A DNA stretch of 62,446 nt, counting the filler, from Sluysia triapertura (taxonomy: Eukaryota): NCBI GenBank assembly GCA_046118255.1. It is 5 parts of 5 records of this genome, joined end to end, with 100 filler letters (N's around TTAATTAATTAA, not from the genome) between each part and the next. Parts side by side here need not be neighbours in the genome. Positions count along the whole stretch, not along the records: positions 1 to 14,702 come from JBJNIA010251640.1; 4 more parts are not named here. One strand, given 5' to 3'. This document shows positions 8,810 to 14,629 of the stretch, in pieces; the first letter of the stretch is position 1; each line of letters opens with the position of its first letter. The position numbers were made by a program, and so were the translations under genes. Under the pieces are notes generated by a model. That model was not told the origin of the DNA. It saw only the letters and a program-made list of their open reading frames with translations, and made no database searches.

Positions 8810-9450
8810 ACAATATATAACCATAGTTCTAACAAATGAGAAATTTTGAAAGAGAAGACCAGTCTTTTAGTGTCAATTGGCTCTAACATTTTCCAATAAG
8901 CCATTAAGTAATTACGGATAATTAAGAATATTGTGAAGAATTTATAGAGTTTTGTTTTTCAGAGTATTTTGCTACACAAGATTGATACAATTTAAACTAA
9001 TCCTCGAACACTAATTGTGAAATTCAGTCCTTTTTATGTGCACTCCAAAAAACTGGAAGATATTCTCTATGTGAAGTATAATTGAATAAAATTATTTTTG
9101 ACATTTCCTCAAAGTAAATAATATAATAAAATCTCATTCACTGAGCTCTATTGGTTCATCTTTGTTTTAAGTGCCCTTTATTTGAGGATAAAATCCCCGT
9201 AATTCGCAAAATTATTTTCTTCAAATACGTAAATCATCTGATCTCTTACTCTTAACTGTAATATTCCCAAATCCAGATCAATATATAGTTTCTTAAACCA
9301 TCTTTTACTTGTAATAAAGATATGTTTTTCTTCAGAGTATGTTTTTTCCATTGAAAAATATTAAGAGCTTAACTTTTAATGATACAAATATGGTGTTAAA
9401 GCAGATCATCCACTGAAAAAATAGGATCCGGAAATGCATAAGCAACAATA
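8810..9450 (-). pseudogene. Probable decayed C-terminal half of a protein-primed B-family DNA polymerase (Polinton-type)
   Basis: Broken-frame motifs occur in the expected order: DPIF.G*SAL (~KPIYVGxxIL), VKLLIFF (~SKLLMYxF), KLYIDLDLGI (~LLYxDTDSxI), FFGVHIK (~FxGLRxK), ISVRGL, KMLEPIDTKR (~KxLSxxDDKR), YGY. Each motif is weak on its own. Confidence 0.45.
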
Positions 9451-9668
9451 ATAACGTGAAAAATGTGAAAGAATTGCAAAATAAATAACATTTATGGTGC
9501 TTATAAAACGTACTATCTACCAGGCAAGAAATTATGAATCTCGTTCCTCATATCGTACGAAGTATAAATATATCTATGATTTTGACGATTTATATCAAAA
9601 TTTGTATTGAAATAAAAGAAACTGTTAAATTGAAACTTAATTTATTTTTAAAAATAAATGTATTTACG

Positions 9669-9672
<4 letters not shown>

Positions 9673-9719
<47 letters not shown>
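9673..9719. repeat. (TTA)n microsatellite
   Basis: Directly visible; explains the poly-Leu ORF 9534-9788. Confidence 0.97.
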
Positions 9720-10039
9720 GTTTGTTTATTGAATAAACAATCGAAATTATTAAACAAAACAGGTTTGTTTATCTGTCCTTGTTATTAGGATGAAAATGAC
9801 AATAAATATTTGTTTTGTAATAATAATGTATGGCTTATTATTTTAAAAATTAATTTGTAATGAAAACTTGTCGTCAATTATTCTAAATTTAAATTAGACA
9901 TAATTCATTTAATTAATGATTAATGACTCTAACTCACTTTAAAATTATTCGTAAACTTTAGGCAAATATAAACTTTATTTTTAATTTTCTTGAAATTATT
10001 ATAGTTTAACTGTATCATTAAACACCTACAGTTGCTTAA

Positions 10040-10275
10040 CCATTTCAATCCTACTGGGATATCTATGTTCCAATAAATTTCTAATAAACATTGAAAAGAA
10101 AAAATGTTATTTTATTTAATATGTCTTTGAATATTATACATCCCACCAAATTGCTCAATTACTAATTAAAAGTATGACATATTGAACAAATTTCTTGTAT
10201 CTGTATGCATATTAGTACTTATTAAACTAAGAATTAGATGTAAAAATTGTTTAGAAAAAAATCGTATTGAAAGGG
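10040..10275. mobile_element. piggyBac-type MITE with TTAA target duplication
   Basis: TTAA(10036-39)-CCATTTCAATCC ... GTATTGAAAGGG-TTAA(10276-79); 10/12 inverted match. Confidence 0.7.
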
Positions 10276-10279
10276 TTAA

Positions 10280-10933: not shown

Positions 10934-10959
10934 TTGATGATAATAAATATATTACTTTG

Positions 10960-11843
10960 ACATTTATACCACTAATTGAGATTCAAGTATCTATTTCCTG
11001 TATCCAACCTATTTATCAAGTAAATTTTTGGTTTTTCCTTTAGTTTTTAAAATTGATTCAATACGATAAGTTATCTGTTTTATAGGTTAAACTTGTAATT
11101 CTTCATGATAAAATTTTTCTTATATCATCGCTATCTTTTAATAGATATATTACAAGATTTTGTCTTGCAAATATTTCATGAATTTGAAACACTTCATCAC
11201 TCCAATTATTATTACTATTATTATAGAGTCACTAATTTTAAATTTAGGTTCTTTTTTGTTTTTGCAAATTTCCATAAAATTAGTTGAATTACTATCTAAA
11301 TCCATCAAGTCCTCGGTGTTTACTGTGATTATATACATCAGTTACATTAGGGGTAATACATTTTTTATTTTTTAGTATATCTCTTATAGTACAATTAATG
11401 GTGTCCATTACTGACTAAACATTGAACATGATTAATTCCATGTTTTCCTATTACTTTTTGCACATATTTACTGTAAAACTCTTTACCTAAATCAGATTGA
11501 AAATTTCTAGGTTGTCTTTAATTAATGGCGATACTGCTTCACTTGTATCTTTATCACTCTTTGATTTAACTGATAATGATCTTGCAAATCCTAAAAACAA
11601 TTTGAAATATATTTGTAACCATTATTAATTTTGAAATATGAAATAAAATCAGTTTGCCATAATTGATCTGGTCCTGCTGTTTTGCACATACTTGTTGAAA
11701 ATCTGCATCTAGTTAATTTGCTAAGTTAGTATGCCGACTGATAGTATAGTATAATATGTGAACAATTGGATCTTTTGTCTTCGTCTTCTCTCCATTAAAG
11801 CTAGATAATGCTGAACTCATACTTTCCATATTTTTTCAAACAT
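10960..11843 (-). pseudogene. Polinton/Maverick retroviral-like (rve) integrase with C-terminal chromodomain, decayed
   Basis: Motifs in order: SSFNGEK; TRCRFSTSMCKTAGPDQLWQTDFISYFKINNGYKYI; GFARSLSVKSKS; RQPRNFQSDLGKEFYSKYVQKVIGKHGINH; VYNHSKHRGL; KEPKFKISDSI; NWSDEVFQIHEIFARQNLVIYLLKD..FYHEELQ; K*VGY. These are diagnostic of Polinton c-integrases. Confidence 0.9.
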
Positions 11844-11844
11844 T

Positions 11845-12215
11845 TAGTTTATCCCAACCCGAACTTATTAATCCACCAGTAAGTGATGCCACAAATTGTA
11901 GCAATGTACCAATAAATCAACCATTTTGTGTGTGTATTACTTGTCTTTTTGAATTTAAATTTTGCATTTGTATATTTTTCTTAGATTCATTAACATTTAT
12001 TTTACCAACAGTTAATTTATCAATATATCAATGAAATCATCAATTTCAAACGAAGGAAATGATTTTAAAATTATGAGTCTACGAGATTGTTGTGCTTTCA
12101 ATAATGCATTAAAGTGCGGTTTACTATGTTCAAAATTTATCTTTTTGTTTTGATGTGGCACAGTCGAAATTAATTGTTTCATATGTTTGACTATAAATTT
12201 TTTAAAATTAATCAT
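11845..12215 (-). pseudogene. Small basic Polinton ORF ending in a QxGG-F amphipathic segment (decayed)
   Basis: ORF 12012-12215 continues after a stop into VGKINVNESKK...SKRQVI..QNG*FIGTLLQFVASLTGGLISSGW. This resembles the small KRxxLxQxGGFL protein that I recall lying upstream of Polinton integrases. Confidence 0.5.
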
Positions 12216-13599
12216 AGTTAATTAATATCTAATTTCATACATTGTACAAAATATAAAAACAAATGTTCATGTGGTATTTTTGTTGCGAGATGAAAAACAT
12301 TTATTAAAAATAATAAAAATAAAGTGATTATCTCTAGGATTTTTAAATATTATTAAATAATGTACATTCAAAGTTCGAAACGACGATTACCACCTTGATG
12401 AAACAGATTTTGAGTTAAAAATTTACATTCACTTGACTAGTTATTTTAGTGAATAAATTATTAAAATCATCCCATTCAAAGCTTTTTCACATAAGTCATG
12501 TTTACTAGTCTGCTTGGCCAAAAAAATTAATTATGTTGTCTTTTAATACTTTTATTTTTAAATGATCAAATTAAAGCTCAATTACTAAATAAATTCAAAA
12601 TCTCGATATTTTCTCCAATATTGTCACAATATTACAACAAATACTGTTTACAATAATAACAATACAAATTGTTCTTTATTGTTTATAAACTTCAAATTAT
12701 AAATCTTTTTAATCATTATCAACTAATCTAAGATAAATAAATAAATAATCTTCCTATATTTCTATAATGCTTTATTTTAGCTGATTGCCAAAGAATAAGC
12801 TTCAAATTCATCATCTCTACAGGTAGAAAGTTTTTGTCTTCTTTTGTTGATCTAAATAAAGCTCGACTCTTTCTTTTTTGTCTAAATTTTTGCAAAAATT
12901 TAGAAATTGAAAAAGACGGAAATTGAAGCTGTTTATTCTTTTTTAGTCGATGATAAGCCGATCAATTTTACTGATTAAATTTCGACAGCATTTTCTGACT
13001 GTATCCAATTTCATTATCTTTTTAATTATCTAAAAATAATGGGATTTGTGGTAAACAATCCCCTTAAATATCATTAAATTACAATTTAAAATCATTATTA
13101 TATTGTTAACTTAATTTAATGATAAAATTAATGAGATAATATATTTATTTCTCTTAGGAATCTTTTGTATAATACGTTGTGCGTCAACCGTGCGTCACAC
13201 GTCAAGTTCAATAACATATTTGAATTAGTACCTTTATAAACATCAATTTGATACATACTTTTTATTAATACTTAAACATTTAACTTTGATTTTAAATTAT
13301 AAAAACTAATTAAAATAACTACTTTTTACGTTATCTGTGTTGATGTGCTTCGCAATACTTAAAAAAATATTATTAAATATTTAAAATATTAATAAAACTC
13401 AATATTATAAACTAAATCTAATATCATTCTGTCATGAGCTATCAAATTTTTTATTGAGTTATCAAATTAAACACATTTTAATTAAGTTCAATAACAAATG
13501 TACTTTAATATTTTAACAAATAAAACCCTGTAAAAGGTTATCTCTTCGTATTTCTCATTATTTTGTTTTGATTCAAGTATTTTATATACCTATCTTACC

Positions 13600-13867
13600 A
13601 TTATAATTCATCATAATACTCTATCTCAATTCCTCAGTGACGTTCACCTTATTCTGTTATCCTGACTCCTGACCCTTATATCTACCTTTATCATTCACTA
13701 ATTCCAACTAATTACTTTAATATTTTTTAATTTATAAAATTAATCCATTTCTACATTTCAACCGTGATAAGAGCATATTTTATTAAAATTATTTTTAACG
13801 TATTACTTTGTGGTTATTTATGTACAAGTGTTTTTCCATTACCATTTGGACCTACGGTTTGGTACAT
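13600..13867 (-). pseudogene. Polinton A32/FtsK-like packaging ATPase N-terminal remnant
   Basis: MYQTVGPNGNGKTLVHK* (Walker A), then after a frameshift VKNNFNKICSYHG*, matching GPSGSGKT...FxKIxxxYGxW of Polinton ATPases. Same strand as the integrase and penton. Confidence 0.6.
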
Positions 13868-14629
13868 CGCATTATTATTTAAATTTGTTTTATATCTTAT
13901 CTTATAAGAAACACATACATAACATGCATTTATTCCGGTAATTCATTGCAAATGCTATTACAATTAAAGTAATTCAGAAGCAGTGTGTAGAAATATTCTA
14001 AACTTGGTTTAATAAAAATTAATAAAATCTTACCTTTATACTAATTTGTTTTCAATTATCTGATGATATCTGCAATTTTACATGCTGCGGTACTATAGTT
14101 TCTATTAAACAGATAACATTTTCATTTTTATCAATAATTTTAGTATAAGCCTGTCCTTGAACATCAATAAAACATAATATATTTTCATATCAACATTCAT
14201 TAATACATTTTCGTCCGCAATTTTTCAATATTACATAATATTTAAAAAGTAAGTAGTACTATTTCGCATAATTTAGTGAAAAATCTAGAAATAATTAAAG
14301 AAGTACCCATGTTTTGGTGTTTTATTTAAAGTTTTTTTTCACTTGTCAAATATAAGTTCTCCTTTTTTCAATTTATAGTTTTATTGTCTTGCATTTTGTT
14401 TATCATTTTGTTTTTGTGTTAATAGTTTTCTTGTTTTTGGTTAAATAATGATTTTCGTGGTATTGTTATTGTCTTATGTGCAAGAGATTTTACATTTTTA
14501 AAATTATGTTATTAATGATGTGAATCAAATAATTACTTCATCATTTACCTTTCTTGAAGTTCAAAAATTATAAATAACTACAAAGTTATCACTACTTTTA
14601 AGTATGATATGTGGGTCTATCTTTTTTAA

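What the first reader, a model, noticed from the sequence alone, without database searches (positions are those of the whole stretch)
8810..13870. Fossil Polinton/Maverick endogenous virus hidden antisense in the presumed ankyrin-gene intron
Seen: co-oriented minus-strand remnants in 5'-3' order: packaging ATPase Walker A (GPNGNGKT, ~13850), a small QNG*FIG/LTGG protein, rve integrase with chromodomain (11843-10960), penton N-terminus starting just downstream (10933), and a probable pPolB tail. The ORF track shows almost none of this because every gene is broken. Known: integrase plus A32-like ATPase, capsids and pPolB define Polintons. Inference: an old capsid-encoding endogenous virus of this host lineage; no major capsid, protease or TIR is recognisable here. 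Intact relatives may exist elsewhere in the genome.
Basis: partly seen in the sequence, partly recalled or inferred. Interest (0 to 1): 0.78.

Follow-up and report, generated by a model that had tools for sequence, protein, structure and literature searches.

The report
Decayed integrase relic, possibly Polinton
Beside an ankyrin-repeat exon lies the badly eroded remnant of a mobile element's integrase gene, plausibly from a Polinton/Maverick-type endogenous virus, but only the integrase could be confirmed, and such relics are common and long dead.

Summary

- **Integrase: supported.** Two separate open pieces hit Pfam rve. They match the start and the end of the profile, in the right order and at a sensible spacing.
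- **Walker A motif at 13829-13852: beyond chance.** One was seen against 0.04 expected. It matches only generic P-loop families.
- **Other claims: no tool support.** This covers the A32/FtsK-type ATPase, chromodomain, penton and pPolB tail. The tools used were:
  - Pfam on 59 minus-strand pieces and PHROGs on 10;
  - PDB searches with five pieces;
  - two word searches;
  - the one whole-library phmmer job.
- **Terminal repeats: none found.** No TIR or LTR was found.
- **Retrotransposon markers: none found.** There is no RT or RNase H upstream of the integrase. HHCC, YPYY and GPY patterns are absent around it.

My reading is an old, dead, incomplete fragment of an integrase-bearing element. 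It is most likely Polinton/Maverick (adintovirus-like), on the strength of resemblances I only remember and could not test. The kind is already well known in animal genomes, so interest is low.

The parts
10960..11843 (-). Integrase pseudogene (rve family), one broken gene. The profile-supported core is about 11419-11674.
   Evidence: Pfam rve hits on two collinear open pieces. Each of the three minus frames holds 21-30 stops in the 294-codon span, and the longest open run is 63 codons. The two supported pieces lie in different frames. No HHCC, YPYY or GPY pattern was found, and no Integrase_H2C2 or Chromo hit.
12150..13000 (-). Zone where I read, by eye only, remnants like the C-terminal half of a Polinton-type FtsK/HerA packaging ATPase. 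The clearest stretches are at 12330-12347 and 12392-12412. Unverified.
   Evidence: No Pox_A32 or other ATPase family was found in Pfam or PHROGs. The whole-library phmmer job with the 39-residue piece gave only a spurious repetitive hit. PDB gave nothing. There are 22-26 stops per frame in 283 codons.
13829..13852 (-). Walker A (P-loop) motif, a remnant of some NTPase of undetermined family.
   Evidence: One occurrence against 0.04 expected by chance. Only generic hits were found: PhoH and ABC_tran at E about 0.2, and ABC proteins at E above 1 in PDB.
11844..12149 (-). Stretch between the ATPase-like zone and the integrase. Identity unknown.
   Evidence: No Pfam family. The word search with the 69-residue piece found no candidate.
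10700..10959 (-). Unverified.
   Evidence: The string is at 10892-10906. No family hit on the pieces here. The libraries at hand hold no Polinton penton model that I know of.
8810..10699 (-). Nothing is recognisable. It holds a (TTA)16 microsatellite at 9672-9719.
   Evidence: Pfam found nothing relevant on 10 pieces.
13001..14702 (-). Upstream stretch running to the edge of the piece. Its strand composition matches the integrase zone, so minus-strand-derived sequence may continue beyond the piece.
   Evidence: GC skew is -0.16 here and -0.14 in the integrase span, against +0.07 left of 8708. No family hits apart from the P-loop.
8544..8708 (+). Ankyrin-repeat exon-like ORF of the host gene, bordering the region (ORF bounds, not splice sites).
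   Evidence: Pfam Ank_5 7e-07 and Ank 1e-04.
4693..4947 (+). Second ankyrin-repeat exon-like ORF of the host gene (ORF bounds).
   Evidence: Pfam Ank_2 4e-13 and Ank 2e-12.

Best explanation
The region holds a dead, incomplete and heavily eroded fragment of an integrase-encoding mobile element. It lies antisense next to, and probably in an intron of, an ankyrin-repeat gene. The element was most likely a Polinton/Maverick (adintovirus-like) endogenous virus.

Shown:
- an rve integrase remnant;
- a P-loop remnant on the same strand;
- strand composition consistent with minus-strand coding ancestry from about 8.7 kb to the edge of the piece;
- complete loss of open frames.

Inferred:
- the element entered the germ line through its own integrase;
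- the antisense copy was tolerated because it did not disturb the host transcript;
- it has since decayed neutrally under AT-biased mutation, until frame lengths are at the random level.

It does nothing now as a virus or transposon. The Polinton assignment rests on three things: the co-orientation of the integrase with stretches that I recognise from memory as the FtsK-type ATPase, a small ORF and an ORF start typical of animal Polintons; the absence of retrotransposon domains; and the absence of Gypsy/Ginger1 integrase motifs.
For: - Two collinear rve hits, and none in the controls.
- Walker A beyond chance.
- No RVT, RNase H or retropepsin family in any of 59 minus-strand pieces across 8.8-14.6 kb.
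- No HHCC, YPYY or GPY patterns. Gypsy and Ginger1 integrases carry these (PMC6839031).
- No LTR pair.
- GC skew switches sign near 8.2-8.7 kb and stays negative to the edge of the piece.
- Literature: nearly all adintovirus contigs above 10 kb carry rve plus a FtsK/HerA ATPase, their integrase has a predicted chromodomain, and degraded endogenized copies occur in a wide range of animals (PMC8502044).
Against: - No profile or search supports an ATPase of the packaging family, a penton, a major capsid protein, a protease or a pPolB.
- No TIR was found and no TSD can be defined.
- Polintons are defined by pPolB plus integrase (PMC5499653 abstract), and pPolB is not seen.
- The Walker A motif is about 1.4 kb from the ATPase-like stretch, and the two zones show no similarity to each other.
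- Single weak Pfam hits at E near 0.002 also arise by chance here: Sid-5 on an off-frame piece. Only the paired rve hits carry weight.
- The family-specific resemblances are from my memory and were not tested.
Confidence: 0.55

Rival explanations
1. The integrase is the 3' part of an old LTR retrotransposon (Ty3/Gypsy chromovirus or BEL/Pao). Its RT and RNase H have been deleted or eroded beyond detection. The P-loop is unrelated debris.
For: rve is shared by these elements, and the Pfam hits cannot tell them apart. Chromodomains at the integrase C-terminus are classic for chromoviruses (PMC6839031).
Against: No RVT, RNase H or protease hit upstream, although the shorter rve domain is still detectable. 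No Integrase_H2C2 hit, and no HHCC or GPY pattern. No LTR-like direct repeat. The chromodomain itself has no profile or PDB support.
Confidence: 0.15
2. The integrase is the transposase of a cut-and-paste DNA transposon of the Ginger2/TDD or GingerRoot kind, and no viral genes were ever attached.
For: Such elements carry an integrase-like DDE protein alone, without Gypsy-type flanking motifs in GingerRoot (PMC6839031). Here only the integrase has tool support.
Against: No TIRs flank the integrase. A P-loop remnant that is unlikely by chance lies on the same strand. Minus-strand compositional bias extends over about 6 kb, more than a small transposon would need.
Confidence: 0.1
3. The region is a mosaic of unrelated transposon debris. 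It holds an orphan integrase fragment of unknown parent, an unrelated P-loop fragment and random AT-rich sequence. The apparent co-oriented gene order comes from reading motifs into K/N/I/F-rich translations.
For: All searches beyond rve were blank. Open-frame lengths are at the random level. Another transposon remnant (hAT type) sits in the same gene, so this locus collects insertions.
Against: The uniform negative GC skew over the whole stretch and the co-orientation of the two features that exceed chance. Several distinct family-typical stretches in one orientation would be an unlikely coincidence, but that judgement rests on memory.
Confidence: 0.2

Closest known systems
Endogenized Polinton/Maverick elements of animals (adintovirus-like; Starrett et al. 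2021, PMC8502044; Krupovic et al. 2014, PMC4028283)
   Same: An rve integrase and a P-loop remnant on the same strand. A germ-line copy degraded by stops and frameshifts. The literature reports such relics across animals, including a highly disrupted one in placental mammals that could be read only by alignment to an intact relative.
   Different: No pPolB, hexon/PY, penton/PX, adenain or confirmed FtsK ATPase. No TIRs or 6-bp TSD. The piece may hold only part of the element.
Ty3/Gypsy chromoviruses (LTR retrotransposons with an integrase chromodomain)
   Same: An rve integrase, and possibly a chromo-like C-terminal stretch.
   Different: No RT, RNase H or protease. No LTR. No HHCC or GPY motifs around the core.
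Ginger1, Ginger2/TDD and GingerRoot DNA transposons (PMC6839031)
   Same: An integrase-related DDE protein as the only confirmed gene.
   Different: No TIRs. Ginger1's YPYY, H2C2 and GPY motifs are absent. There is an extra P-loop remnant, and about 6 kb of same-strand compositional bias.

Membership tests
Polinton/Maverick (polintovirus, adintovirus-like) | Retrovirus-like rve integrase | tested here: met
   Two collinear Pfam rve hits, at profile 3-26 and 67-97. None in 18 control pieces.
Polinton/Maverick (polintovirus, adintovirus-like) | [quoted passage not shown] | tested here: not met
   No DNA_pol_B_2 or other polymerase family in 59 minus-strand pieces, including the claimed 'tail' zone. 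It could lie beyond the edge of the piece.
Polinton/Maverick (polintovirus, adintovirus-like) | FtsK/HerA (A32-like) genome-packaging ATPase | tested here: inconclusive
   A Walker A motif is present beyond chance, but with generic hits only. The ATPase-like zone at 12.2-12.5 kb has no Pfam, PHROGs, PDB or whole-library support. The pieces are too short (39 residues or fewer) for a fair test.
Polinton/Maverick (polintovirus, adintovirus-like) | Double jelly-roll major capsid protein (PY) and penton (PX) | tested here: inconclusive
   No hit on any piece. I know of no Polinton capsid model in the libraries at hand, so a blank says little.
Polinton/Maverick (polintovirus, adintovirus-like) | Adenain-like cysteine protease | tested here: not met
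   No Peptidase_C5 hit on any piece.
Polinton/Maverick (polintovirus, adintovirus-like) | Terminal inverted repeats with 6-bp target-site duplication | tested here: not met
   The repeat finder gives only short AT-rich chance pairs. One end may lie outside the piece.
Ty3/Gypsy LTR retrotransposon | RT and RNase H upstream of the integrase on the same strand | tested here: not met
   No RVT or RNase H family in the pieces between 11.8 and 14.6 kb.
Ty3/Gypsy LTR retrotransposon | Long terminal direct repeats | tested here: not met
   No direct repeat longer than 47 nt, and all are AT-rich with low identity.
Ty3/Gypsy and Ginger1 integrases | YPYY, HHCC zinc finger and GPY/F motifs flanking the DDE core (PMC6839031) | tested here: not met
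   Pattern counts are zero in the flanks. No Integrase_H2C2 hit. Decay could have erased them.
Chromodomain-bearing integrases | Chromodomain at the integrase C-terminus | tested here: inconclusive
   The 25-residue chromo-like piece gives no Pfam Chromo hit and no chromodomain in PDB. It is too short for a fair test.

The most novel reading that the evidence does not exclude
The relic records an old, now extinct Polinton/adintovirus lineage of this AT-rich animal host, with no close living or endogenous relatives in public data. The one piece sent to the 1.84-billion-protein library found no true relative. It would then be a palaeoviral marker useful for dating virus-host association in that lineage.
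Probability: 0.1. Interest if true: 0.35.

Novelty: new member of a known kind. Interest (0 to 1): 0.15.

Why it matters
If the Polinton reading holds, this is one more fossil copy of a virus-like element family already known to litter animal genomes. It is useful for repeat annotation of this gene and, together with orthologous loci, for dating an insertion. It carries no intact gene and opens no new question. The practical lesson concerns the scan. Its further gene labels could not be backed by any profile or search.

Tried and rejected
Searches that led nowhere:
1. Pfam on 59 minus-strand open pieces across 8.8-14.6 kb. Only rve recurred. Scattered weak hits to unrelated families (Sid-5, SAPI, Phage_80a_gp11 and others) are taken as chance. 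Eighteen plus-strand control pieces gave similar noise.
2. PHROGs on 10 pieces: nothing.
3. PDB sequence search with five pieces: nothing, or generic ABC P-loops at E above 1.
4. The single whole-library phmmer job, with the ATPase-like 39-residue piece. The one hit, P0001, is a repetitive protein matched eight times by a low-complexity stretch, so it is spurious.
5. Word searches with an rve piece and with the 69-residue piece: no candidate. The tool's length window excludes full-length relatives of such short pieces, so these blanks say little.
6. Internal tblastn of pieces from 12.2-13.05 kb against 13.05-14.7 kb, to test for two ATPase copies: no signal above background.
7. Rfam and tRNA scans: nothing.
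8. Full-text search for four short strings from the window's ATPase-like stretch: no paper.
9. Host look-up through an ankyrin exon ORF: not on record.

Procedural points and slips:
- The costly whole-library job was run before the word searches, not after them as the operators had asked.
- Scripts printed the bounds of open stretches, so that I could query pieces by reference. Such bounds coincide with stops, so those print-outs come close to a list of break places.
- In my reasoning I compared stretches by eye with motif patterns that I remember for Polinton proteins, and I traced which frame carried which part. That is memory, not a test.
- The ankyrin exons were searched one by one and never joined.
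Full report
**Setting.** The piece (1-14702) is very AT-rich, with GC of 0.21-0.30. It has no ORF longer than 84 codons. On the plus strand, two ORFs are ankyrin-repeat exons by Pfam: 4693-4944 (Ank_2, 4e-13) and 8544-8705 (Ank_5, 7e-07). I searched them one by one and did not join them. No further ankyrin exon was found downstream among 18 plus-strand open pieces, so 'intron' is presumed and not shown. A separate transposon remnant lies upstream on the plus strand. 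The ORF at 2805-3053 has one relative, P0002, at 68% identity and E 3e-16. That relative's precomputed Pfam family is FAM200-GTF2IRD2-like, which is hAT-type. From this, from the ankyrin gene and from the composition, I take the host to be an animal and not human. That is my inference and was not tested.

**Observation.** I read the minus strand of 8700-14702 in three frames. Everything is broken. In the 294-codon integrase span each minus frame holds 21-30 stops, and the longest open run is 63 codons. In the 283-codon ATPase-like span the figures are 22-26 stops and 77 codons. Open-stretch lengths on this strand do not exceed those on the other strand or elsewhere in the piece.

**What has tool support.**
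- *Integrase.* Of 59 minus-strand open pieces scanned against Pfam, two hit rve. One covers profile positions 3-26 (E 0.024) and the other positions 67-97 (E 0.0048). They are in the right order on the minus strand, in different frames, with about 32 codons between them for 41 profile positions.
- *Weight of those hits.* Each hit alone is weak. An off-frame piece in the same place even hits an unrelated family at E 0.0016, so single hits mean little here. A second piece hitting the same one of 24,736 families at that score, in order, is expected about once in ten thousand such scans. None of the 18 plus-strand controls hit rve. I take the integrase relic as real, with its core at about 11419-11674.
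- *Walker A.* G-x4-GK[ST] occurs once in six frames, against 0.04 expected from 400 dinucleotide-preserving shuffles. The stricter form occurred in none of the 400. It is probably a true P-loop remnant. Its piece matches only generic families (PhoH and ABC_tran at E about 0.2; ABC proteins at E above 1 in PDB).
- *Strand composition.* GC skew is +0.07 left of 8708. It is negative from there to the edge of the piece: -0.14 in the integrase span and -0.16 in 13001-14702. This fits minus-strand coding ancestry over the whole right-hand 6 kb, perhaps continuing beyond the piece.

**What has no tool support.**
- *Packaging ATPase.* No Pox_A32 or related family turned up in Pfam or PHROGs, and PDB gave nothing. 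The one whole-library phmmer job, with the 39-residue ATPase-like piece, returned only a repetitive protein matched through a low-complexity stretch.
- *Chromodomain.* No Pfam Chromo hit and no chromodomain in PDB.
- *Penton and pPolB tail.* Nothing on 20 pieces between 8.8 and 10.95 kb.
- *Word searches.* Searches with an rve piece and with a 69-residue piece found no candidate. That tool cannot see full-length relatives of such short queries, so this says little.
- *Repeats.* No TIR or LTR was found. The only tandem repeat is (TTA)16 at 9672-9719.

**Leads from memory, not tests.** By eye I recognise four things:
- at about 12.2-12.5 kb, stretches like the C-terminal half of the FtsK/HerA-type packaging ATPase of animal Polintons;
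- downstream of it, a small ORF;
- in the integrase C-terminus, the module that Polinton integrases carry before their chromo-like end;

I write out no letters for these. No named hit came back for any of them. If the ATPase reading is right, the Walker A at 13.85 kb lies about 1.4 kb too far upstream to belong to it without a large insertion. The two zones show no similarity to each other.

**Which element?** Polintons are defined by a protein-primed PolB plus an rve integrase (PMC5499653 abstract). An ATPase is identifiable in 83% of them, a protease in 74% and an MCP in more than 80% (PMC4028283). They have 6-bp target-site duplications (TSDs) (PMC6839031). Here only the integrase is met.

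Against a Gypsy-type origin:
- no RT, RNase H or protease remnants upstream, although the shorter rve is still detectable;
- no LTR;
- none of the YPYY, HHCC or GPY motifs that flank the core in Gypsy and Ginger1 integrases.

Against a small Ginger-like transposon:
- no TIRs;
- an extra P-loop;
- about 6 kb of same-strand bias.

I put a Polinton/Maverick (adintovirus-like) origin at about 0.55, a retrotransposon fragment at 0.15, a Ginger-type transposon at 0.1, and unrelated debris with over-read motifs at 0.2.

**Mechanism.** As it stands the region does nothing as a mobile element, since no gene is intact. The likely history is inferred, not shown. The parent element integrated into the germ line through its own integrase. 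The antisense orientation was tolerated beside or within the ankyrin gene. Long neutral, AT-biased decay followed.

**Novelty.** Degraded endogenized adintovirus/Polinton copies are reported across animals. Their integrase is described as carrying a predicted chromodomain, next to a FtsK ATPase (PMC8502044). This is at most a new member of a known kind, and interest is low.

- I ran no pattern scans or look-ups that would fetch DNA of relatives, or more of this element beyond the piece.
- I did not search supplementary sequence files of Polinton papers for the window's motifs.

Noticed in passing
window 2680-3690 (+), clearest at 2805-3053: Remnant of a hAT-type transposase of the FAM200/GTF2IRD2-like family, in several broken frames, upstream of the ankyrin exons. 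One relative, P0002, has 68% identity (E 3e-16) and carries Pfam PF27046. The local Pfam copy does not hold that family.
   Followed up: partly
window 4693-4947 and 8544-8708 (+): Two ankyrin-repeat exon-like ORFs of a host gene. A donor-like CAG|GT lies near 8696. No further exon was seen downstream in the piece, so the finding's region is either an intron or 3' flank.
   Followed up: partly
window 9672-9719: A perfect (TTA)16 microsatellite. It reads as poly-Asn or poly-Leu runs in translation and explains the longest plus-strand ORF there.
   Followed up: yes
window about 8250-8700: Cumulative GC skew peaks here. G exceeds C to the left and C exceeds G to the right, up to the edge of the piece. 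The switch in strand composition coincides with the last ankyrin exon.
   Followed up: partly
window 13829-13852 (-) versus 12200-12500 (-): The only P-loop motif lies about 1.4 kb upstream of the only ATPase-like stretch. Either a large insertion separates them, or they come from two different genes. A D5-like helicase is one possibility from memory, untested.
   Followed up: partly
window 11569-11712 (-), off-frame piece: A Pfam Sid-5 hit at E 0.0016 on a piece that overlaps the integrase core in another frame. I take it as chance. It shows how low single-hit E-values can fall in this AT-rich translation.
   Followed up: no
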